Shown in pieces: positions 4,794 through 64,000 of a stretch of 64,000 bases of DNA (positions are counted from its first letter, which is position 1; each line of letters begins with the position of its first letter). Both the position numbers and the translations under genes were made by a program. This DNA comes from Ylistrum balloti (lineage: Eukaryota): contig NW_026782308.1 in the NCBI RefSeq assembly GCF_031769215.1, positions 372,001-436,000 on the forward strand, read 5' to 3'. The notes beneath the pieces were generated by a model that searched no databases, had not been told where the DNA came from, and was given only the letters and a program-made list of their open reading frames with translations.

Positions 4794-7700
4794 ATGGCAG
4801 CTCAGACTTTTCAACAGGAATATATGCAGATGCCCCCAATTACGCGGGCTTACACAACAGCATGTGTTTTAACAACAGTCGCTATTGTAAGGATTTGGTA
4901 TTGATTATTGATAAGTTAGTAACTCATAACTGTAAGTTCTGGCTTCTAATCCAAATAGAAACATATAAAGATGTTAGAAAAGCCAGCCATGATATCAGAG
5001 GAAGGAATCGTCAAGATTCTCACCCTTGGACTGGTTGGAAATATTTTTGTTTAATCACGATATTGGAAATTCCGTATTCTCCACGTTTTTATATAACCTT
5101 TTCTACCTATTCCCCTGAAAGGACAGTATAGTGGACAAATGACACATTTAATAAATCGATATGCCCAATGGCCAGTGAGAGGTGAATCTTGTGTTCTTAA
5201 TAAAAATGTTGTTAACAAATTAAAGTGACTTTTCATATGTATCAATTGAAAAATATATATTCAGCTTTTTAATGCTGTCAATTTAACGATAATTTTCTTC
5301 GTGGTGTTAGCTGAAAGAGATATACATTATAGGATGGTATTTCCTTTGTATTTAGTTTAAACATGGATTTTGTTTTATAAACATCATTATATGAAAAGTT
5401 AACAGAAATTATTTGTAAAAAAAATCTGTAAGCTTTCTAGTTACTTTTTAATTTTGAGAGAAAAGAAAGCTTTTGCAAGGAAGCATATGCAGTTTGTTAT
5501 CCCTCTGTATCCTCCCCACCCAACCTGTTTACTTAGAAGGGCAGTAAATGACATTCAGATGTGATATCCTTCTCTGACAGCACACAATTGTGCCTCAGTT
5601 TTCATGATCATTAATGCGCTGAATGGTATGACCAATGTAGTCAAGGGAGTGCTTCAGACCACTTTCCTCGAACATGAGTTCGAAATGCATGGGATAATGT
5701 TTGCTTCATCAGTGTACATTATTTTTTCAACTTGATTGTATGAAATGTTATATTGTTGAACTTTTTTTTCACATGTTATCAAATGAAATGAGAGAAAATC
5801 GGAGGTAAATTTTTTGACAAATTTTTTGCATCACTGAGTAGAGCCATTATTGTCCAACAGGTGTAAGCCCTCCCATCAATTTTGTGAGGTTAGAATCTGT
5901 GGATACACAATATATGATTTAGAATTGTACATAGGTGTAATGACTGTATGCATCTATTCTACATTTGTATTCATGATAATCATACTTTTGTTCAGCATCC
6001 CAGCGGGAATTGAACCAGAGTTTTTGGCATTGAAGCAAACTACAGTCGTCATACGTTCTTCTTAAATTAGCTGTTACACACAGTTAGGTTTATAGTATAA
6101 GGAATTCTTCCTTGTACTCCATTAATGTAGAGGTAAAATTGGAAAATGGGGGTCAGTACCCATTGCAGCATACTACTTGACATTCTGTAAATGGTCACAT
6201 TTGATTCCCCACATTTATTGGTAAGGCAATGTGTCGGAAATATATTTCATGGGTCAGTAACATTTCTGTGCTTCACAATTAAGAAATAGCAAAGATCTTG
6301 ACATAGATCAAATTGAACTTAAATTTGACCATTTGTGGACCAAAGACATTTGGAGGATGATGGATATAGGATGATGTTGTTCAACCAAATCATGCTTTTA
6401 AAATCAAAGCCATATTTCTAGGTTTTACACAGGGTTTACTCATAAACATCATGATATTATATAACTCATCCAGTATTTATAGTATTTAAATCCATATTTC
6501 AATAATTTTTAAGTTTCTTGCTCTCCTTTTTCCAAGCTCCTGAATTCCTTGTAGACAGGCTTGTAAAAAGATATTAAGTTTGGTTTTATTTTTCATTCTC
6601 TTTACAGCAACTTGATGTGATAACTCCATTCCAAATCTATTTTAATCCAGACCTTATATTTAGAAAATATGAGGTAAGTTATTTGTAAATTGTGTATAAC
6701 ATCCAACAAGAAAACAATAGGTATTCTCAAGAATTGTATTTGTTAGAATTTGAATTAGCCACAATAAGATTATTTGTTTGTTCAAGATGCTAGTTTGAAT
6801 GGGATAGATGATTAGATATAATTATATGCTAAGTTTCTGCAAATTGGCTTGTAATTCTCTTTTTTCCCAAGGATGGTAACAACATTTCAGTACTGAAAGC
6901 AAAATTTCTCCAATCAAAATTATTATTTTTTTTTTGCCTTTTTTTTCTATTCAGACACTGTAATGATAAGAATAAGCATGTCTCATTTGACACTTAACAC
7001 TTTCTGTACCTCCTCATCATCCAATGATGAAATGTAATTATATCTATTATTTATATTTATGTTTTTTCAGGTATGGAGATTGGTAACAAATTTCATGTAC
7101 TTTGGACCAATTGGATTTAATTTCTTATTTAATATGATATTTGCGTATCGTTATTGTCGGTTATTGGAGGAAGGATCTTTCCGTAATCGAACAGCTGATT
7201 TTTTTTTCATGATAATATTTGGAGCTGCTCTTATGATTGTATCCTTTGTCAATCAAAATTAATTCATTCTGTATTATGTGATAGTCTGATGGTGTGAAAT
7301 GAAAACATTTTAAGTGTTTCAATATTTGTGGTTCAGCATAAGCTTTAGAAAAGACTAAAACACTTGAACTTATGATCTTTGAATTCCAACTCATTTACTC
7401 TAGACTTAATACATTGTATTCATCTTGTGACATTATATAAGAATTTTAGGGGAGCAGTATATGACACCTTGCAGAATATGCATCATTTTCACTAGTGTAG
7501 AAACTGTAAAGAATTCTGACACACTGTGCTGTCACAACTATAAGATATTGGAATAACTGATTGTGAGGCAGCATATCATCAAACTGACCATGTCTTTTTA
7601 TTTAAGCTGTATCTTATTTAAAACCAAAACAAAACAAAAAAGGTACCTGTATCAGCAAAGAGATCGGTTTTGAAATTTATGCGTGGAATCAATCAAATCA

Positions 7701-54212: not shown

Positions 54213-55850
54213 GACAAAATACACAATGTTATCCTTAACACCGGAGGACAAAATACACAATATTATCCTTAACACCGGAGGACAAAATACCCAGTATTAT
54301 CCTTAACACCGGAGGACAAAATACACAATATTTTCCTTAACATTGGACGACAAAATACACAATATTATCCTTAACACCGGAGGACAAAATACACAATATT
54401 ATCCTTAACACCGGAGGACAAATTACACAATATTATCCTTACACCAGAGGACAAAATACACAATGTTATCCTTAACACCGGAGGACAAAATACACAATGT
54501 TATCCTTAACACCGGAGGACAAAATACACAATGTTATCCTTAACACCGGAGGACAAAATACACAATGTTATCCTTAACACCGGAGGACAAAATACACAAT
54601 GTTATCCTTAACACCGGAGGACAAAATACACAATATTATCCTTAACACCGGAGGACAAAATACACAATATTATCCTTAACACCGGAGGACAAAATACACA
54701 ATGTTATCCTTAACACCGGAGGACAAAATACACAATGTTATCCTTAACACCGGAGGACAAAATACACAATGTTATCCTTAACACCGGAGGACAAAATACA
54801 CAATGTTATCCTTAACACCGGAGGACAAAATACACAATGTTATCCTTAACACCGGAGGACAAAATACACAATATTATCCTTAACACCGGAGGACAAAATA
54901 CACAATGTTATCCTTAACACCGGAGGACAAAATACACAATGTTATCCTTAACACCGGAGGACAAAATTCACAATGTTATCCTTAACACCGGAGGACAAAA
55001 TACACAATGTTATCCTTAACACCGGAGGACAAAATACACAATATTATCCTTAACACCGGAGGACAAAATACACAATATTATCCTTAACACCGGAGGACAA
55101 AATACACAATATTATCCTTAACACCGGAGGACAAAATACACAATATTATCCTTACACCGGAGGACAAAATACACAATATTATCCTTAACACCGGAGGACA
55201 AAATACACAATATTATCCTTAACACCGGAGGACAAAATACACAATATTATCCTTACACCGGAGGACAAAATACACAATATTATCCTTAACACCGGAGGAC
55301 AAAATACACAATATTATCCTTAACATTGGACGACAAAATACACAATGTTATCCTTAACATTGGACGACAAAATACACAATGTTATCCTTAACATTGGACG
55401 ACAAAATACACAATGTTATCCTTAACATTGGACGACAAAATACACAATATTATCCTTAACACCGGAGGACAAAATACACAATATTATCCATAACACCGGA
55501 GGACAAAATACACAATATTATCTTTAACACCGGAGGACAAAATACACAATATTATCCTTAACATTGGACGACAAAATACACAATGTTATCCTTAACATTG
55601 GACGACAAAATACACAATGTTATCCTTAACATTGGACGACAAAATACACAATGTTATCCTTAACATTGGACGACAAAATACACAATGTTATCCTTAACAT
55701 TGGACGACAAAATACACAATGTTATCCTTAACACCGGAGGACAAAATTCACAATGTTATCCTTAACATTGGACGACAAAATACACAATGTTATCCTTAAC
55801 ATTGGACGACAAAATACACAATATTATCCTTAACACTTGGTCACAAAATA
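54213..55850. repeat. 34-bp minisatellite, ~48 copies
   Basis: Unit ggacaaaatacacaat(g/a)ttatccttaacaccgga; the variant attggacgac clusters at the right end. Confidence 0.98.
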
Positions 55851-57846
55851 AACAATATTATCATTTACACCGAAAAGACAATCTATACAATTATTACCGA
55901 AAAAACTGCGATCAATAAATCTTTTGGTATTTTTTCAGAATATTTTAGAATTGCATTTTTTATTACTGATAACCTGTCGAAGTGTTTTATGTATAGCCCA
56001 CCAATAGTGTTATAGATAATTTAAAGACAAACTCATCCAATATTATGACGTAATATATTTTGCAGTAGAGAAGCATCTTTCTCACAAAAGGTAATTATTC
56101 TAGACTGGATTCTTCTGTTGATTGTAATTGTGTAGCACGATCTTAACAAAATGGAGGGGAAAATCATTTTAAAAACTTTTTGGAAAAACGGCTCATCCCC
56201 GATAATCAAGTGAAGCATAGTATCTTTTAAAGTGTTTACAGTTTTCACCGACAAATAAATTCATTCTGATATCAAATTGAAAATATTAACATTTTATGAA
56301 CAAAATAAACGGATTGATATGTGGACAAAATAAATTCAAAGTATTTATACTTTAGAACAAAATACATTGTCGCGTCAATTTATGACGAAATACATCAAAG
56401 CGATAATACTTTAGGAAAAATATACTAACGATTAAATATGTAAACAAAATTAAGTGGTGACACTGATTATCAACATATATACCAAACATATCGTAGTATC
56501 ACTATATAGACAAAAATATCTCAATACTACAGGAAAAATAGATTTCATATTACCACACAGGCAAGAACTCAATATACTCCATCAAAAAAGCCAGTGATCC
56601 AGAATCATAAAGAAGACAGACGAAGATTTATCAAAACCAAAAAGGAACACAATATGAACTTCCATCAAACGTGATGAGTTTTTTTTACGAAGCTATACCA
56701 GATCGTCCACAACAGAAGACGACAGTAAGAATAAACCACATCCAAAGGAAGGAAAAACAAATTGAACCTCATTCAAAAGATCGATTTCATAGCGTCATGG
56801 TGTTTCTTCAGATTTACAAATTCAGCTAGTCAACATTGTCAATTAGGTTTATTTGATTAACTGGTGATAGTGTCAAGTATATTTCTTAAAAATGATAATC
56901 GAGACAATGTTTAACAGATATTTAAAAAAAATCTGAGAGAAATCTGATAGTTACTTAGTTTTATAATTTAGAATACGATTTCCTAAAACACATGGTAGTA
57001 ACATCGAGTAAGTGTAGAAATACTTAAATGTTTCTAACTTACCTGTGTAGGTTATATATGTGATTCCTTTTCGTATGTAGGTGAGAAGGTGATGTATACC
57101 TGGACAAAGACTCAGGTAGATATACCGGCACTCGTCTGTCTCATAGATATATGTACAAACATAGGAGGTAAGTAAATACAAACAGATCAAAAACACGATC
57201 TCCGCGACACACAAGCCGTCTAACAATGCCTATAACAGTTGTCCTTGTCGATGCAATGCCTTGAGATTTTAGTGCCTCTTCTAAGGTATCGCGCCATTAA
57301 TTTGTAGCATAGTTAGTCTCGCTCTCGGGAAGGGAAACACAAACCGATATCATTGTTCATTTCCTGTTCAATTCACAACATAAAAATGTGTTGATTCGAA
57401 ATTACCACAATTGATTAAGTGTAATTAAATGACGCGTTCGGTGTGAGGTAGGTATAAGTCTCAATATGTTGACAAGCTGCAGCAGCTTGGGGTTTCTCAC
57501 GGGTTGGTTATTAATATTGGGTGTTATAGATCTATAACATTATCTTGTTACAGTGTTAAACTGCCTAATGATGCGTCATACCAATCACTCCCCAGCAATT
57601 TATTCTAGCGTGCGTACTTATTACAAACAACTCGCTCCACTGCTCCCACCAACAGCCATATCTACCGAAAATCTCGCTTAATGAGTTCTTTTTAAAGTCT
57701 GATCTAAATTTAATGCGCATGTTTTAATGGGCTGGTTATTTTATGTAAACTTTTCAATAAAACTGTTTTTTTTAATTCAAAAGAAATAGCACTATGCATA
57801 CAGGCCATTATAGCATAGCCATGTTAAAGCCCCGTTATAGATTGTT

Positions 57847-57991
57847 TTAAATATTCCCGCGTTTCGGTAGTATAGCGGGAATAGTTCGTCTTCTCAGGCA
57901 CGTAGAGCACGTGCGTATGCCCAGGTAAGGGTGGGTGCGCGGGTGAATAGTCATTCTCTAGCTCTCCGTCTAGCAGTGCAGTCCAGTTAAT
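57847..57991 (+). repeat. Split direct repeat A1
   Basis: Identical to 62425-62569. Confidence 0.95.
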
Positions 57992-58026
57992 GTCTCTATC
58001 ATATATATAGTATCATAGTTTCTACC

Positions 58027-61000
58027 ATGCAGAACGATTCATTATGCACACTGTCGGACCAGATACAGGCTGCGGTTGGAAAGTCACAAAACGAAATACT
58101 CGGGCATTTGGATACATTAATTTCACAAAAGTTGAGCTCGTTTGAGAGAAAAATGTGTGAAAATTCTGAGGCATCTTTAAACAAGATACAAGAAACAATT
58201 CAGTGTACGGATACCTACAAATTCAAAAAGAGAAGTTGCGAGGAACAGTACAAGTTCAATACCAAAGTGCGCGGGAAATTATTGGACGCCGCGCAGGCCG
58301 TCAGTACGGACATGGACACCGCCAGGCTTAAGATACAGGAGGGTATGTCGCTTATAGACTATCGCAACAAGCTAATTAAGTTGGCGGACAGTTCTGAAGC
58401 AGGCTGGAAAACCGTCGATGAGTATGTAGCAAATCCTATAGCGTCGGACTCCGACGATGAAAGGAAAATCGACAGGGCCAGCTCCAAGGCAGTTAAAAAG
58501 GCAAAGGCGGAAAAGTTAAAGTCCAGCAGGGGAAGACAGCGTTTCAACCCTTATCAAAGAGAGACTTTTGTGTCCAGGAGCCAGACAAACGCCGCTACTA
58601 CGACCGACAGAACAGGTCCTTTCCCACGGGGCGGGACCAAGCCCGGTACATGCTTTGGGTGTGGAAAGGCCGGACATTGGCGACAAGAGTGTCCGGAAAT
58701 CAAAGGAGTCGCCTCGGCTGTATCCGGATATAAGATAAGTGGTTCTTTATTTGATATGCATGAAAAAGTATCGGCGAAGCAGGACGCAGGTAAGGTAGGG
58801 GCGACACAGGACGCTCCACGTGTCACATGTGATACTTCGCCAGTGGGGCGCTTGAAGGGTAAGAGCCAGTATTGGGCAGACCAAGGTACCATTGAAGTAG
58901 TACAATCTATCATCGAGAGAGGTTATAAAATTCCTTTTCACGAAATTCCACCAAGGGTGTCTTTGTCAAATAACAAAACCGCAAAAGATAACCCCGATTT
59001 TGTCGTGGGGGAGATAACTAAGCTTTTACGGTTAGGTTGTGTGTCGGAAGTTTCGTCAGAGCCCGCGGTCATAAATCCGCTCACTGTAGCTTTCAATCAA
59101 TCAGGTAAGCCCCGCCTAGTTTTGGATTGCAGGCACATAAACCCTTTTTTGCATAAATTCAAGTTTAAATACGACGATGCAAGGGTAGCACGGGATGTTT
59201 TCCAGCCAGGAGATTTTTTGTTCACTTTTGATTTGAAGTCTGCTTACCACCATATCGAAATTTTTGAAGAGCACAGGCAATTTCTCGGTTTTGAGTTTGA
59301 AGTGGAAGGCAAAACACGCCAGTTTGTTTTCAATGTGTTACCGTTTGGTATCTCTACTGCTGGTTACGTGTTTACCAAGGTTCTAAGGGAGGTGGTCAAA
59401 TCTATCCGTTTATTAGGTCACAAATTGGTCATGTATTTGGACGACGGTATTGGAGGTCACGAGACAGAGGGCGGGGCTAACGAGTCCAGTAGGTATGTCA
59501 GACAGGCATTGATCGATTACGGTTTTCTCATAGCCGAGGAGAAGTCCAATTGGGTAGCTTCCCAGCATGTCACGTGGTTAGGTTACACGTGGTCGACGGG
59601 AGAAGGCGTGGTCAGGGTCACGTCGGGTCGTGTCGAGCGGCTTTTGTATTGGCTGACCAATACGATGACACATGTCAAACAGAAAGACCTGCCTTTGCTC
59701 TCGGCCAGGTACATAGCGGGCATAGTAGGTCAGGTCATATCAATGCAAGGTGTTGTCGGTCACGTGGCTAGACTACGTACACGGGAGTTGTACAGGTGTG
59801 TATTGGCTAGAGCCAGTTGGAATGCGCGTGTTTTGCTCACGTCGGGAGCTCTAGACGAGATCCAATTTTGGTTGTCTAACGTAAAGGCACTGAACGATAA
59901 GGGTTCACAGTTAAAGCAACACCTAGTCTGTGACGCCATACTTTGTACTGATGCATCCGGTGAGGGATACGGGGGTTATGTTCAATATGTGGACACATCA
60001 GGCAGGTGTGAGCATGTTGGAGTGACGCAAGGTGTCAACGGGTGCACATACATACACGATACAAACAGTATCGAGACAGGTGCAAGCAAATGTTACCAAG
60101 GTGTAATCCCCCAGGGGGACTTTGTAACGGTACATGATACAGATGTTTTTCAACACCCCCAGGGGGCTTGTGAGGTCCGACCCCGGATATATTTAGGCCA
60201 TGATCATGATGGAACAAAATGGGGTCAAACGTTCGAGTTTCTTGGTCAATGCAACAGCACCCAGGGTGTTAGGGGGTCTCCGAGACCCGGGTTTTGCTAC
60301 GGTAGCAGTATTAGTCCCACGGGAGGACTAGTAGGTGGCCCAGTGAGAGACGTGATTGGTCTGCAGGGCAGCGAGGTAAGCGTTTTGGATCGCTCTCTTC
60401 CTACAGTAAGGGATCTTTACCACATGGATAAACATGTCGCCTTGGGAACATGGGATGAACGGGAGAAAAGGTATAGCTCAACTTGGAGAGAGTTAGAAGC
60501 AGTCAAAAGGGTGTTGTTGGCTAAGGTCGATATGGTCAAAGGTAAGCAGGTAAAACTGTTAACAGATAACAGAAACGTTTGTTCCATAGTGAAAACTGGT
60601 AGCAGGAAGCCAGACCTACAGAGGGTCGCACGTGAGATTAACGAGGTGTTGGATTATAATAACACGGGCGTTAGTACACAGTGGCTACCAAGGATTAGTA
60701 ACAGTACCGCCGATTACTTGAGTAGATGTAAAGACTGTGACGATTGGTCGGTGCAGTCATGGGTTTTTGAGGAGTGTCAGTTATTATGGGGTCCACATCA
60801 AATCGACCGGTTCGCGACAGATTATAACAGCAAATGTGTGCGTTTTAATTCCAAGTGGTGGTGCCCGGGTACAGAGGCAGTCGATGCTTTCACGGTAAGA
60901 TGGCAGGGAGTCAACAACTGGTTAGTACCTCCCCCTAGACTCGTTTGCGGTGTGGTTAGCAAAATGAGGGACGAAGGAGCTTATGGGACCATAATTGTCC

Positions 61001-61191
61001 CCCATTGGAGGAGCGCGGCATACTGGCACTTATTGTGTCCTAAGGATGGGGCTTTCGATTCTTTCATAGTAGATTATCGTATACTGCCCAGTAGAAAAGT
61101 CACACTGAGGGGGAGGGGGACCAATGGATGTTTCGGAGCCAGTATTTTGGGTTTCGACATGTTGGCCCTCCGGTTAGACTTTAGACATTGA
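58027..61191 (+). CDS. DIRS-type Gag-RT-RNase H-methyltransferase-like polyprotein, 1054 aa
   Basis: Gag with KLIKLADSSEAGWKTVDEY and CCHC knuckle CFGCGKAGHWRQEC (58651). RT motifs FDLKSAYHH, LPFG and YLDD (59434). RNase H motifs TDAS, REL, TDN and ADYLSR. MT-like domain DRFA...RFNS...DAFT...WLVPP...IVPHW. Confidence 0.95.
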   Translation: MQNDSLCTLSDQIQAAVGKSQNEILGHLDTLISQKLSSFERKMCENSEASLNKIQETIQCTDTYKFKKRSCEEQYKFNTKVRGKLLDAAQAVSTDMDTARLKIQEGMSLIDYRNKLIKLADSSEAGWKTVDEYVANPIASDSDDERKIDRASSKAVKKAKAEKLKSSRGRQRFNPYQRETFVSRSQTNAATTTDRTGPFPRGGTKPGTCFGCGKAGHWRQECPEIKGVASAVSGYKISGSLFDMHEKVSAKQDAGKVGATQDAPRVTCDTSPVGRLKGKSQYWADQGTIEVVQSIIERGYKIPFHEIPPRVSLSNNKTAKDNPDFVVGEITKLLRLGCVSEVSSEPAVINPLTVAFNQSGKPRLVLDCRHINPFLHKFKFKYDDARVARDVFQPGDFLFTFDLKSAYHHIEIFEEHRQFLGFEFEVEGKTRQFVFNVLPFGISTAGYVFTKVLREVVKSIRLLGHKLVMYLDDGIGGHETEGGANESSRYVRQALIDYGFLIAEEKSNWVASQHVTWLGYTWSTGEGVVRVTSGRVERLLYWLTNTMTHVKQKDLPLLSARYIAGIVGQVISMQGVVGHVARLRTRELYRCVLARASWNARVLLTSGALDEIQFWLSNVKALNDKGSQLKQHLVCDAILCTDASGEGYGGYVQYVDTSGRCEHVGVTQGVNGCTYIHDTNSIETGASKCYQGVIPQGDFVTVHDTDVFQHPQGACEVRPRIYLGHDHDGTKWGQTFEFLGQCNSTQGVRGSPRPGFCYGSSISPTGGLVGGPVRDVIGLQGSEVSVLDRSLPTVRDLYHMDKHVALGTWDEREKRYSSTWRELEAVKRVLLAKVDMVKGKQVKLLTDNRNVCSIVKTGSRKPDLQRVAREINEVLDYNNTGVSTQWLPRISNSTADYLSRCKDCDDWSVQSWVFEECQLLWGPHQIDRFATDYNSKCVRFNSKWWCPGTEAVDAFTVRWQGVNNWLVPPPRLVCGVVSKMRDEGAYGTIIVPHWRSAAYWHLLCPKDGAFDSFIVDYRILPSRKVTLRGRGTNGCFGASILGFDMLALRLDFRH

Positions 61192-62261
61192 AAACTTACA
61201 CATGTTCATACCATACTGAGCATTGTTTTACTGTGTTTATTGTTACAGGCATAGGACTGAGGAAGTCGATCAGCGATGCCGTCAAAGCTTCTGGGGTAAC
61301 GGAGGGTTCCGATCTGCACGCTCTGACCGAGGGTATGGCTGGCAGACTTTTACTAAGCAGGAGTGTCAACACAGGCACCAAGTACTATGGAGCTTTCGCG
61401 AAATGGGAACATTTCATTTCCGGACATGGTTTTTCGTCTATCCCGGCAAATCCCATACACGTGGCATTATATTTAAATTCTTTATTGGAAAAGGGAGGGA
61501 CTTACGCAGTGGTGTCGTCTGCAGTATATGCTATCAAATGGGTGCACAATCTTAACGGACACATCGACCCTACAACAAACTCATTCGTACAGAACTTAAT
61601 TGAATTTTCCAAACGAGAGGCTAAAAATCCTGTTTGCAAAAAGGAACCGGTCACGACTGACATTTTGATCAATTTGTGTGGAATGTTTTTGAATGAGAAT
61701 GACTTGTTGGTAGTGAGAGATCTTGCCATGATTTTGTTAGGGTTTTCCGGTTTTTTACGTTTTAACGAGCTCAGTAGTTTGCGTTGCTCTGATGTTCAGT
61801 TTTTCGAGGGGCATTTAACGCTCAATATCAGGAAAAGTAAAACAGACAAATATCGCTTTGGTAGTCAAGTGGTCATCAGTAAAGGTTCGACTGTAGCTTG
61901 TCCGTACACCATGTTATCAAGGTATGTTGAGTTATCAAAAATTGACTTAAGTTCGGATCATTTTTTGTTTAAGCAAGTTTATCGTTCCGGTCAGGGTTGT
62001 AAGCTTATTAACAAAAATAAGCCACTTAGTTACACAGGGGCTAGGCAAGCTGTCATGAAAAGGTTGAAACTAGTTTCCAATGATACAAATTTTGGTTTAC
62101 ACTCGCTCAGAGCAGGGGGCGCCACAGTGGCCGCCAACAACGGAGTGAACGATCGATGTTTCAGGAGGCATGGCCGCTGGAAAGGCGAATCTAGCAAGGA
62201 TGGTTATGTCGCTGACTCTTTGGAGTCTCGTTTACTGGTAACACAGAAGTTAGGTTTGTAA
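61188..62261 (+). CDS. Tyrosine recombinase of the DIRS element (listed start is TTG; first in-frame ATG at 61335; probable splice acceptor at 61248/61249)
   Basis: Complete catalytic set: GFLRFNEL (R), RKSKTD (K), HSLRAGGA (HxxR), HGRW, DGY (Y). N-terminal SRS..T..KY...F.KW is typical of DIRS recombinases. Confidence 0.95.
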   Translation: MKTYTCSYHTEHCFTVFIVTGIGLRKSISDAVKASGVTEGSDLHALTEGMAGRLLLSRSVNTGTKYYGAFAKWEHFISGHGFSSIPANPIHVALYLNSLLEKGGTYAVVSSAVYAIKWVHNLNGHIDPTTNSFVQNLIEFSKREAKNPVCKKEPVTTDILINLCGMFLNENDLLVVRDLAMILLGFSGFLRFNELSSLRCSDVQFFEGHLTLNIRKSKTDKYRFGSQVVISKGSTVACPYTMLSRYVELSKIDLSSDHFLFKQVYRSGQGCKLINKNKPLSYTGARQAVMKRLKLVSNDTNFGLHSLRAGGATVAANNGVNDRCFRRHGRWKGESSKDGYVADSLESRLLVTQKLGL

Positions 62262-62344
62262 TTAATATGGTTATTTGATCAATTATTCAAAGGCGGTTAG
62301 GTATTCCCCAACCACAACCCCCTTGCCCTTTCTTTGTTAATTCT

Positions 62345-62569
62345 CTAATTCGTGACGGGCTAGTACGGCAAATGAGTATTTGCGGGTTTGAGTTTTCTTT
62401 TCGGGCACGAAGTGGAGAGAAGACTTAAATATTCCCGCGTTTCGGTAGTATAGCGGGAATAGTTCGTCTTCTCAGGCACGTAGAGCACGTGCGTATGCCC
62501 AGGTAAGGGTGGGTGCGCGGGTGAATAGTCATTCTCTAGCTCTCCGTCTAGCAGTGCAGTCCAGTTAAT
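62345..62569 (+). repeat. Internal B1-A2 junction (copy of the circle junction)
   Basis: B1 (...gagaagac) abuts A2 (ttaaatattccc...). Confidence 0.93.
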
Positions 62570-63026
62570 TTAGTTAGTTAGTGTGCCTATCAGTATTATT
62601 ATATGTAGTTGGTTTGCTCCGTTTTCTAGTCTTGCTATTTTATGCTTGCATTCCTGGCGAGGAAATCTGGAAGTCTGGGTATGCTTAGTGGGAGTGTGAT
62701 TGGCTGATATTGTGTTAGTGGCGCTCCGGTAGAACGATTGTTTTTATTATTTTTTTTTTCGACACCGGTCCTTGTGTCGGCCCGGAGAACGTATTGCAAT
62801 TGGAGGTAATCGATTCCAGCCCCGTTGGACACAGGTTTCCGGGGATTATCTCCGGTTTTTCCTGGGCGCGCGATACATTCTGTGATGGGAGGTGAGTATG
62901 GAGTGTCTAGGACGCTCTCGTGGGTGAGGAGTGTGTGCGTTAGGGACGTTTGCGTCACGTCTGTCGGAGTGAGATTCGTACGTACAATGTATTTTCTACA
63001 CCATGTATTATTAAACGCCTACTGCA

Positions 63027-63107
63027 CTAATTCGTGACGGGCTAGTACGGCAAATGAGTATTTGCGGGTTTGAGTTTTCTTTTCGGGCACGAAGTGGAGA
63101 GAAGACT
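63027..63107 (+). repeat. Split direct repeat B2
   Basis: Identical to 62345-62425. Confidence 0.95.
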
Positions 63108-64000
63108 GTGAAGGTCTATGGATGGTGAAGGGAGAGACAAATCTCATCACACATTCGGGACGTGGTGTGTACTACATTATTTTGGTCTATGGGTGATGAA
63201 GGGAGAGACAAATCTCACCACACATTCGGGACGTGGTGAGAATATTGTGAAGGTCTATGGATGGTGAAGGGAGAGACAAATCTCATCACACATTCGGGAC
63301 GTGGTGTGTACTACATTATTTAGGTCTATGGGTGGTGAAGGGAGAGACAAATCTCACCACACATTCGGGACGTGGTGTGTACAACATTATGAAGGTCTTG
63401 GGTGGGACAAATCTCACCACACATGGTGAATAGAAGGAGATGGTGAAGGGAGAACAAATCTCATCACACATTCGGGACGTGGTGTGTACTACATTATTTA
63501 GGTGTGTATCGGGACGTGGTGTGAACATTATGGATGGTAACGTGGTGTGTCTATGGGTGGTGAAGGGAGAGACAAATCTCACCACACATTCGGGACGTGG
63601 TGAGAATATTGTGAAGGTCTATGGATGGTGAAGGGAGAGACAAATCTCATCACACATTCGGGACGTGGTGTGTACAACATTATTTAGGTCTATGGGTGGT
63701 GAAGGGAGAGACAAATCTCACCACACATTCGGGACGGGGTGTGTACAACATTATGTACGTCTATGGGTGTTGAAGGTAGAGACAAAACTCATCACACATT
63801 CTGGACGTGGTGTGAATATTGTGACTTTGGATGGTGTGTACGTGGTGTGTACTACATTATTTGAAGGAAGAGGTCTATGGGTGGTGAAGGGAGAGACAAA
63901 TCTCATCACACATTCGGGACGTGGTGTGAATATTGTGAAGGTCTATGGATGGTGAAGGGAGAGACAAATCTCATCACACATTCAGGTCGTGGTGTGAGTA
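63108..64000. repeat. Degenerate ~70-bp tandem array (71+68 = 139-bp dimer), runs off the window
   Basis: gagagacaaatctca(t/c)cacacattcgggacgtggtg at 63132, 63203, 63271, 63342 and onward. Confidence 0.93.

What the first reader, a model, noticed from the sequence alone, without database searches (positions are those of the whole stretch)
58789..61249. Predicted splice that fuses Gag to the tyrosine recombinase and removes the whole Pol region
Seen: a strong donor GCAG|GTAAGG at 58789/58790, just after the Gag zinc knuckle, and a strong acceptor ttttactgtgtttattgttacag|GC at 61248/61249. Both are phase 1, so joining them gives ...KQDA-G-IGLRKSISDAVK..., a 591-aa Gag-YR protein. The YR frame has no ATG until 61335 and its first 20 codons look like intron. 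Known: copia uses splicing to obtain excess Gag from a fused gag-pol ORF. Inference: this element uses an unspliced Gag-Pol mRNA plus a spliced Gag-YR mRNA, which would supply Gag and load the recombinase into the particle. I do not recall this being described for DIRS/PAT elements.
Basis: partly seen in the sequence, partly recalled or inferred. Interest (0 to 1): 0.85.

Follow-up and report, generated by a model that had tools for sequence, protein, structure and literature searches.

The report
Spliced recombinase mRNA in scallop retrotransposon

Summary

The element (57847-63107) is an intact PAT-like DIRS retrotransposon of Ylistrum balloti with at least 14 near-identical copies. The scan had already noted it as such (s1-234397).

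The acceptor is well supported:
- In more than 10 diverged families, protein conservation of the recombinase starts exactly at a pyrimidine tract followed by YAG, always in phase 1.
- The 29 codons upstream of the ATG evolve as coding sequence.
- About half of the relatives have no Met at that position.

It is specific to this family. It falls in phase 0 in the nearest relative, Mizuhopecten. It is one of several equally strong GGT-AAG sites in the ORF.

Two other phase-1 GTs are constrained at the nucleotide level:
- Gag codon 106 (58342|58343) is GGT in 12 of 12 families, while every other conserved degenerate codon varies. A related family has a real intron of about 550 nt at exactly this site, kept in three transposed copies. 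Splicing from here gives a 442-aa product.
- The AAG-NTR-AGT motif after the zinc knuckle (58738|58739) would give a 574-aa product.

No junction was seen in the only runs served. Those runs are contigs of a relative and may be DNA, so splicing remains inferred. I found no description of natural splicing in DIRS/PAT elements.

The parts
57847..57991 (+). Split direct repeat A1 (left end and leader). It contains a strong 5' splice-site-like CAG|GTAAGG at 57924|57925.
   Evidence: It is 100% identical to 62425-62569. The copies share their left edge at 57847. Donor score.
58027..61191 (+). Single Gag-RT-RNaseH-methyltransferase ORF of 1054 aa.
   Evidence: Pfam hits: RVT_1 at 6.7e-16, RT_RNaseH, zf-CCHC, and a weak Dam hit. 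It is 100% identical to Ylistrum balloti LOC132561188.
58027..58342 (+). Proposed coding part of the 5' exon: the N-terminal 105 codons of Gag, predicted as two long helices, plus the first base of codon 106.
   Evidence: AlphaFold single-sequence model with helices at residues 2-58 and 71-104, mean pLDDT 80. The boundary comes from donor D1.
58340..58348 (+). D1, the conserved phase-1 5' splice site AGG|GTATGT (cut 58342|58343) in Gag codon 106.
   Evidence: The codon is GGT in 12/12 families (17/17 sequences), while all other conserved degenerate codons vary. The site lies 14 codons upstream of ADSS..GW in bivalves and in Saccoglossus. A related family has a real intron exactly here.
58651..58692 (+). 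Gag CCHC zinc knuckle.
58732..58740 (+). D2, the conserved motif AAG ATA A|GT (K-I-S) with a phase-1 GT at 58738|58739.
   Evidence: The same codons, AAG-NT[AG]-AGT, occur in about 12 families. Codon usage makes this unlikely by chance. As a donor it is weak (rank 87 of 273).
58787..58795 (+). It is specific to this family.
   Evidence: It is kept in the degenerate 82% relative L015 but not conserved elsewhere.
61224..61248 (+). Pyrimidine tract and AG of the conserved 3' splice site (cut 61248|61249, phase 1). A second in-phase AG lies at 61254.
61249..62261 (+). Tyrosine-recombinase exon: 336 full codons after the split junction codon, then the stop. The first ATG is at 61335.
   Evidence: Pfam Phage_integrase at 1.5e-09. 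Homologues align from the first residue after the AG.
62338..62425 (+). Split direct repeat B1.
   Evidence: 97% identical to 63020-63107.
62425..62569 (+). Split direct repeat A2.
   Evidence: 100% identical to A1.
63020..63107 (+). Split direct repeat B2 (right end).

Best explanation
This is an intact, recently active PAT-like tyrosine-recombinase (YR) retrotransposon.

The unspliced RNA encodes Gag-RT-RH-MT and is presumably the template for reverse transcription. The recombinase has no conserved start codon of its own. Its coding sequence begins at a conserved 3' splice site (61248|61249, phase 1).

The recombinase is most likely translated from a spliced sub-genomic mRNA. In that mRNA a 5' exon carrying the gag AUG is joined in frame to the YR exon, and pol is removed. 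The donor that evolution has kept is the GT in Gag codon 106 (58342|58343). Using it gives a 442-aa protein made of the two-helix N-terminal module of Gag plus the recombinase.

A second nucleotide-constrained, 5'-splice-site-like motif after the zinc knuckle (58738|58739) would give a 574-aa product. Both are also phase 1 and may give minor or alternative isoforms.

Shown: the sites, their phases, their conservation, the codon-level constraint, and a true intron at the codon-106 site in a related family.

Inferred: that codon 106 is actually spliced to 61249 in this element; that the fusion protein is made; and that the Gag helices tether the recombinase to Gag assemblies.
For: Acceptor:
- In 20 aligned homologues, conservation starts exactly at the residue after the AG. 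Upstream there is only translated pyrimidine tract. About half of the homologues lack the Met that corresponds to 61335.
- At the DNA level, a pyrimidine tract plus YAG|G in phase 1 is present in L031, L034, L037, L038, L039 and L026, in L017/18, L021/23/25 and L028 (alone), in Pinctada L040 and in Saccoglossus L041.
- Differences in the 29 pre-ATG codons fall 8/4/16 by codon position against L037. Identity is 0.68 downstream of the AG and 0.37 upstream.
- The YR frame relative to pol varies among families (2, 2, 1, 0, 1; computed). This rules out a conserved frameshift or readthrough mechanism.

Donor D1:
- The GT is invariant and in phase 1 in 13 families. The codon is GGT in 12/12, although GGT accounts for only 40% of Gly codons.
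- 22 other conserved 4- to 6-fold degenerate Gag positions use 3-6 codons each.
- Where the amino acid changes, it becomes AGT, so the GT is kept.
- The position is the same in Saccoglossus, where RefSeq model XP_077866782 joins exactly D1 to the YR acceptor.
- In the L039 family a 545-555-nt GT..AG intron sits exactly at D1 in three copies at different loci, which are 98.5-99.3% identical.

All 14 copies in this genome are identical at every site.
Against: - There is no RNA evidence. No run on record as RNA was listed.
- The four runs laid are contigs of a 90-95% relative, and their RNA status is only a guess. They show no joint from any gag donor to 61249. Contigs run unbroken across D1, D2 and D3 (X1 record 2) and across the acceptor (X10, X18).
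- D1 is only a moderate donor by consensus (7.2 bits, rank 15 of 273).
- No N-Gag-YR protein from bivalves is in the protein collections.
- Annotated models that use the acceptor pick inconsistent donors, so they look largely ab initio.
- This element does have an in-frame ATG at 61335 that could serve without splicing.
Confidence: 0.5

Rival explanations
1. One reading: the principal spliced mRNA joins 58789|58790 to 61248|61249 and encodes a 591-aa protein of full Gag (with zinc knuckle) fused to YR.
For: - It is the best-scoring donor in the element (11.3 bits) and is in phase 1.
- The joined ORF is open for 591 aa.
- The site is kept in the 82% relative L015.
- It is identical in all 14 copies.
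- The acceptor is real.
Against: - It is not conserved in L031, L034, L038 or L039. The homologous CAG|GTAAGA in Mizuhopecten is in phase 0 and so would be out of frame with the phase-1 acceptor.
- It shows no codon-level constraint at this position.
- Comparably strong phase-1 GGT-AAG sites at 59105 and 60542 show that such sites arise from coding alone.
- No joint was seen.
- L015 has broken ORFs, so its retention of the site is weak evidence.
Confidence: 0.15
2. The acceptor is real, but the donor lies outside gag coding sequence: either the strong leader site 57924|57925 in repeat A1 (as in a retroviral env mRNA) or another upstream or trans-spliced exon. The recombinase then starts at ATG 61335 or at a non-AUG codon.
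For: - CAG|GTAAGG at 57925 ties for the best donor score and sits in the leader, upstream of the gag ATG.
- Leader GTs scoring 6-8 bits exist in several other families.
- X1 and X3 contigs break with a k-1 overlap right at 61247/8, with no matching break at any gag donor.
Against: - The leader ATG at 57917 would be in phase 2, out of frame with YR.
- About half of the relatives have no Met near the exon start, yet the exon is conserved from its first codon.
- This model does not explain why Gag codon 106 is frozen as GGT, or why the phase-1 GTs in gag match the phase-1 acceptor.
- Saccoglossus and Pinctada L040 have no leader donor above 6 bits.
Confidence: 0.15
3. There is no splicing. The recombinase is translated from ATG 61335 on the full-length RNA or on an internally initiated RNA, and the splice-site-like motifs are incidental.
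For: - This element has an in-frame ATG at 61335, and many database entries are 308-aa proteins that start there.
- No junction was seen in the contigs.
- No spliced DNA copies exist in the genome.
Against: - The 29 codons upstream of the ATG evolve as coding sequence, and conservation stops exactly at the AG.
- Many relatives lack the Met.
- The pyrimidine tract plus YAG is kept in more than 10 families while the surrounding spacer is unalignable.
- The frozen GT at Gag codon 106 and the true intron there in the L039 family show that these elements do engage the spliceosome.
Confidence: 0.12

Closest known systems
Avian leukosis/sarcoma virus env mRNA, and retroviral singly spliced mRNAs in general (from my own knowledge, not checked here)
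   Same: The unspliced RNA serves for Gag-Pol and as the genome. A spliced sub-genomic RNA removes pol. The downstream protein uses the gag AUG and a few gag codons, fused in frame.
   Different: Here the downstream gene is a tyrosine recombinase, not env. The retained gag part would be a 105-residue helical module, or nearly all of Gag. The element is a PAT-like DIRS retrotransposon with split direct repeats, not LTRs. Splicing has not been shown by RNA.
Drosophila copia spliced gag mRNA
   Same: An internal intron in a fused gag-pol ORF is removed to change the ratio of products.
   Different: In copia, splicing yields Gag alone. Here it would create a new fusion protein and would be the only evident way to give the recombinase a start codon in many relatives.
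DIRS-1 and DIRS1-like elements (PMC3266345, PMC7192593)
   Same: The gene set is the same: Gag, RT/RH, MT, YR. The YR ORF lacks an obvious independent expression signal.
   Different: In DIRS1-like elements the YR ORF often overlaps pol, and the elements have ITRs and an ICR. Neither paper describes natural splicing. This element has split direct repeats, a non-overlapping YR ORF and a 3' splice site in front of it.
Intron-retaining retroelements: Penelope-like elements and plant Ogre (from my own knowledge)
   Same: The related L039 family keeps a spliceosomal-type intron through retrotransposition (3 copies). This implies that unspliced RNA is the template.
   Different: The class of element and the position of the intron differ. 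Here the intron sits at a donor that intron-less relatives also conserve.

Membership tests
PAT-like superfamily of the DIRS order | Reverse transcriptase plus RNase H of the Ty3/gypsy-related type | tested here: met
   RVT_1 at 6.7e-16 and RT_RNaseH at 2.3e-05.
PAT-like superfamily of the DIRS order | Tyrosine recombinase instead of a DDE integrase | tested here: met
   Phage_integrase at 1.5e-09, above the curated cut-off. The R..H..R..Y-region residues are invariant in alignment A1.
PAT-like superfamily of the DIRS order | Methyltransferase (Dam-like) domain after RNase H | tested here: inconclusive
   PF05869 scores E 0.0087 and 16 bits, below the cut-off of 28. The same family is recorded for relatives P0123 and P0125.
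PAT-like superfamily of the DIRS order | Split direct repeats in the order A1 ... B1 A2 ... B2, with no inverted terminal repeats or internal complementary region | tested here: met
   A1 57847-57991 matches A2 62425-62569 at 100%. B1 62338-62425 matches B2 63020-63107 at 97%. No meaningful inverted repeat was found. The L039 family has the same layout.
Retroelement expressing a downstream gene from a spliced sub-genomic mRNA | A 3' splice site (pyrimidine tract plus AG) immediately before the downstream coding sequence, conserved in relatives | tested here: met
Retroelement expressing a downstream gene from a spliced sub-genomic mRNA | A conserved 5' splice site upstream, compatible in phase | tested here: met
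This holds for 58342|58343.
Retroelement expressing a downstream gene from a spliced sub-genomic mRNA | Junction-spanning RNA reads | tested here: inconclusive
   No RNA run was listed. Four contig sets of a 90-95% relative show no such joint, and they may be DNA.

The most novel reading that the evidence does not exclude
In-frame splicing from a gag-internal 5' splice site (Gag codon about 106) to the recombinase exon is an old, shared expression strategy of metazoan PAT-like/DIRS elements, found from bivalves to hemichordates. It would produce an N-Gag-recombinase fusion whose helical Gag module tethers the recombinase to the Gag/RNA assembly. Some lineages have turned the same donor into a true gag intron that survives retrotransposition.
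Probability: 0.4. Interest if true: 0.75.

Novelty: new variant of a known kind. Interest (0 to 1): 0.62.

Why it matters
How tyrosine-recombinase retrotransposons express their recombinase is essentially unknown. The open-access reviews and the one experimental system (DIRS-1) speak only of overlapping ORFs.

A conserved splice acceptor in front of the YR gene, together with a codon-frozen donor inside gag, gives a concrete and testable mechanism. It predicts a specific fusion protein. It also explains why many YR ORFs lack a start codon and are mis-annotated as 'xerD homolog' genes with arbitrary first exons.

The mechanism implies that these elements must balance splicing against retention of full-length RNA, as retroviruses do. 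That balance would be a point at which the host could control them. The active 14-copy family in this scallop would be a good system for study.

Tried and rejected
- RNA evidence. Two run searches listed no RNA library. The single read-laying run gave only contigs of a diverged relative, with no gag-to-YR joint. Contig breaks at 61247/8 in two runs are suggestive, but sub-family variation explains them as well.
- Spliced (processed) DNA copies. Patterns for all three junctions found nothing in the genome.
- Fusion proteins in databases. Searches with YR, with Gag 1-254 and with Gag 1-106 found no bivalve Gag-YR fusion.
- Annotated fusion models. The ones that exist use different donors, and one uses a pseudo-acceptor inside the pyrimidine tract: Pinctada KAK3101897/KAK3101703, KAK3093741 and KAK3097308; Pecten XP_033731784; Saccoglossus XP_077862362. 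I treated them as ab initio and did not count them as RNA evidence.
- Frameshift, readthrough or reinitiation from pol. Rejected because the YR frame relative to pol differs among families and the overlap of open frames is only 4 nt.
- GATA-site or AT-AC-intron readings of the AAGATAAGT motif. Rejected because the variants AAGTTAAGT, AAGCTAAGT and AAGATGAGT break both readings.
- A one-off transposon insertion as the explanation for the L039 'intron'. Rejected because three copies at different loci share it.
- Literature. Four full-text searches and five papers read gave no description of natural splicing in DIRS, PAT or Ngaro elements. The Goodwin & Poulter and Poulter & Butler reviews are not held, so prior mention there cannot be excluded.
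Full report
Observation. One search shows gcag|gtaagg at 58789|58790 and a pyrimidine-rich tract ending in ttgttacag|gc at 61248|61249. A single ORF runs from 58027 to 61191. It encodes Gag with a CCHC knuckle, RT, RNase H and a weak Dam-like methyltransferase region. The recombinase frame is open from 61185 to 62261, its first ATG is at 61335, and it carries a Phage_integrase domain. Joining the two sites gives a 591-aa ORF with the junction KQDA-G-IGLRK.

The element. Split direct repeats delimit a PAT-like DIRS element at 57847-63107: A1 57847-57991 matches A2 62425-62569 at 100%, and B1 62338-62425 matches B2 63020-63107 at 97%. The genome is that of the scallop Ylistrum balloti, because the Gag-Pol ORF is 100% identical to LOC132561188. 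The assembly holds at least 14 copies at 98.2-100% identity (13 of them at least 99.1%), sharing the left edge 57847. All copies are identical at every site discussed here. This is therefore a very young family, probably still active.

The acceptor is real. A search with the YR frame found hundreds of bivalve homologues. In an alignment of 20 of them, conservation begins exactly at the residue after the AG (TG-IGL..). Upstream there are only F/L/S/C/Y/I/V-rich strings, which are translated pyrimidine tract. About half of the homologues have Leu rather than Met at the position of ATG 61335, and no other Met before the conserved core. At the DNA level, a pyrimidine tract followed by YAG|G, always splitting a codon after its first base (phase 1), is present in these sources:
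- Logan contigs L031 and L034.
- Mizuhopecten L037 and the ENA contigs L038 and L039.
- Several diverged families of this genome: L017/18, L021/23/25, L026 and L028.
- Pinctada L040 and the hemichordate Saccoglossus L041.

The 29 codons between the AG and ATG 61335 differ from Mizuhopecten at 8/4/16 first, second and third codon positions. Ungapped identity falls from 0.68 downstream of the AG to 0.37 upstream. The YR frame relative to pol is 2, 2, 1, 0 and 1 in five families, and the two open frames overlap by only 4 nt here. Frameshifting, readthrough and coupled reinitiation therefore do not explain YR expression. The site ranks 3rd of 398 AGs in the element by a crude score.

Between the zinc knuckle and the SPVG motif the linker varies in length and sequence, and L031, L034, L038 and L039 have no comparable phase-1 donor there. 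The closest intact relative, Mizuhopecten (63% Gag identity), has CAG|GTAAGA at the homologous place, but 7 nt shorter. That puts it in phase 0, out of frame with its own phase-1 acceptor. The only relative that keeps the site is an 82% copy with broken ORFs. Within this element the site ties for the best 5' splice-site score. However, equally good or nearly equal sites lie at 57925 in the leader, and at 59105 and 60542 inside pol. The two pol sites are phase 1 only because GGT-AAG encodes Gly-Lys. A consensus donor in phase 2 would contain a stop codon, so phase 1 has a prior of about one half.

Two other phase-1 GTs are frozen at the nucleotide level. I mapped every Gag residue of the window onto the codons of 13 independent families: five from other species and eight from this genome.
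- All 22 other conserved residues with 4- to 6-fold degenerate codons use 3-6 different codons across the families.
- Gly106 is GGT in 12 of 12 families, and in 17 of 17 sequences in a wider scan of 203 conserved degenerate positions across Gag-Pol and YR. In that scan it is the only such position in Gag-Pol.
- GGT is only 40% of Gly codons in these elements.
- Where the residue is not Gly it is Ser encoded by AGT, so the GT is kept.
- The site reads AAG|GTAT-like. It sits exactly 14 codons before the ADSS..GW motif in bivalves and in Saccoglossus.

In the window this site is AGG|GTATGT, cut at 58342|58343.

The second frozen site is the K-[ILM]-S motif after the zinc knuckle. It is always AAG-NT[AG]-A|GT. 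That is improbable given the usage of AAG (0.43), ATA (0.37) and AGT among AGY codons (0.61). The evidence here is weaker, because AGY and TCN serine codons are not connected by single silent steps, and because the site is a poor donor by consensus.

A true intron at the first site. In the family of L039, gag is interrupted exactly after the first base of codon 106 by 545-555 nt. The interruption begins GTAAAT and ends in a pyrimidine tract plus CAG, and no Gag residues are lost. Three copies on different contigs are 98.5-99.3% identical over 5.96 kb, have the same split-repeat layout and intact ORFs, and all carry the interruption. The intron therefore belongs to the transposing unit. The donor must be used to make Gag in that family, and unspliced RNA must be the template for reverse transcription. 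This shows that the codon-106 GT is a working 5' splice site in this group of elements. In intron-less families such as the one in the window, the only conserved partner for it is the phase-1 YR acceptor.

RNA and annotation evidence. No run recorded as RNA was listed for this stretch. Four contig sets from 'organism A' hold a 90-95% relative, and their RNA status is only a guess. Their contigs run unspliced across all three gag donors and, in two runs, across the acceptor. No gag-to-YR joint was listed. In two runs the contigs break with a 30-nt overlap at 61247/8-61276/7, which is what a graph branch at the acceptor would give. Sub-family variation in the tract could do the same, and there is no matching break at a donor.

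Public gene models do use the acceptor, but with inconsistent donors:
- Saccoglossus XP_077866782 joins codon 106 to it.
- Its paralogue XP_077862362 uses a donor 8 codons later.
- Pecten XP_033731784 uses a donor in the MT region.
- Pinctada KAK3097308 uses a donor in RNase H.
- Two Pinctada models use a false acceptor inside the tract.

I take these models as showing that gene finders see the acceptor, not as transcript evidence. No spliced DNA copy of any of the three junctions exists in the genome.

Mechanism proposed. Full-length RNA gives Gag-Pol. A fraction is spliced from a gag-internal phase-1 donor to 61249, which removes pol and gives the recombinase the gag AUG. The conserved donor at 58342 yields a 442-aa protein. 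Its first 105 residues are predicted to form two long helices (residues 2-58 and 71-104, mean pLDDT 80 from a single sequence), and the donor lies at the end of the second helix. Donors at 58738 and 58789 would yield 574- and 591-aa forms that include the zinc knuckle. It is a reasonable inference, but it is untested.

Comparison and novelty. Functionally this resembles retroviral sub-genomic splicing. The nearest case is the avian retroviral env mRNA, which keeps the gag AUG and a few gag codons (from my own knowledge). It also resembles copia's spliced gag mRNA. Structurally the element passes the tests for a PAT-like DIRS element. The open literature I could search and read describes ORF overlap in DIRS1-like elements but no natural splicing. 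Two key reviews are not held.

Noticed in passing
L039:5424-5972; L074:2428-2972; L075:2418-2972: A related PAT-like family (ENA assembly ERZ25069870) carries a GT..AG intron of about 550 nt inside gag. Three transposed copies keep it, so this is an intron-retaining tyrosine-recombinase retrotransposon.
   Followed up: yes
window 59995-60435: An in-frame insertion of about 140 aa splits the RNase H domain; the scan also noted it (s1-234470). The 90-95% relative in organism A lacks about 102 nt here (joint 60157->60260), and contigs of three runs break at 60153-60264.
   Followed up: partly
window 61836-61838: The Ser of the catalytic-region motif KSKTD in the recombinase is AGT in 9 of 10 families (AAR-AGT-AAR, another phase-1 GTAA). 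It was the only codon-frozen position in the YR scan. It may reflect AGY codon inertia or another signal.
   Followed up: no
window 57917-57933 and 62495-62511: Repeats A1 and A2 each contain a perfect CAG|GTAAGG, preceded by a short ATG-CCC-AG upstream ORF. CAGGTAAG occurs 8 times in the window against 1.3 expected.
   Followed up: partly
window 55000-55990: A long tandem array of a 34-nt unit (at least 26 copies, two sub-variants) lies upstream of the element.
   Followed up: no
window 63045-63996: An array of 68-71-nt tandem repeats begins inside or just after repeat B2 and runs to the end of the window.
   Followed up: no
It has a 24-nt insertion after 58834, and an insertion at the same place and mostly the same in sequence is seen in two of the organism A runs, X1 and X3.
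   Followed up: partly
L073:462-824 and 5145-5507: A Saccoglossus contig holds two copies of the Gag N-terminal exon 4.7 kb apart, which suggests tandem or nested elements.
   Followed up: no
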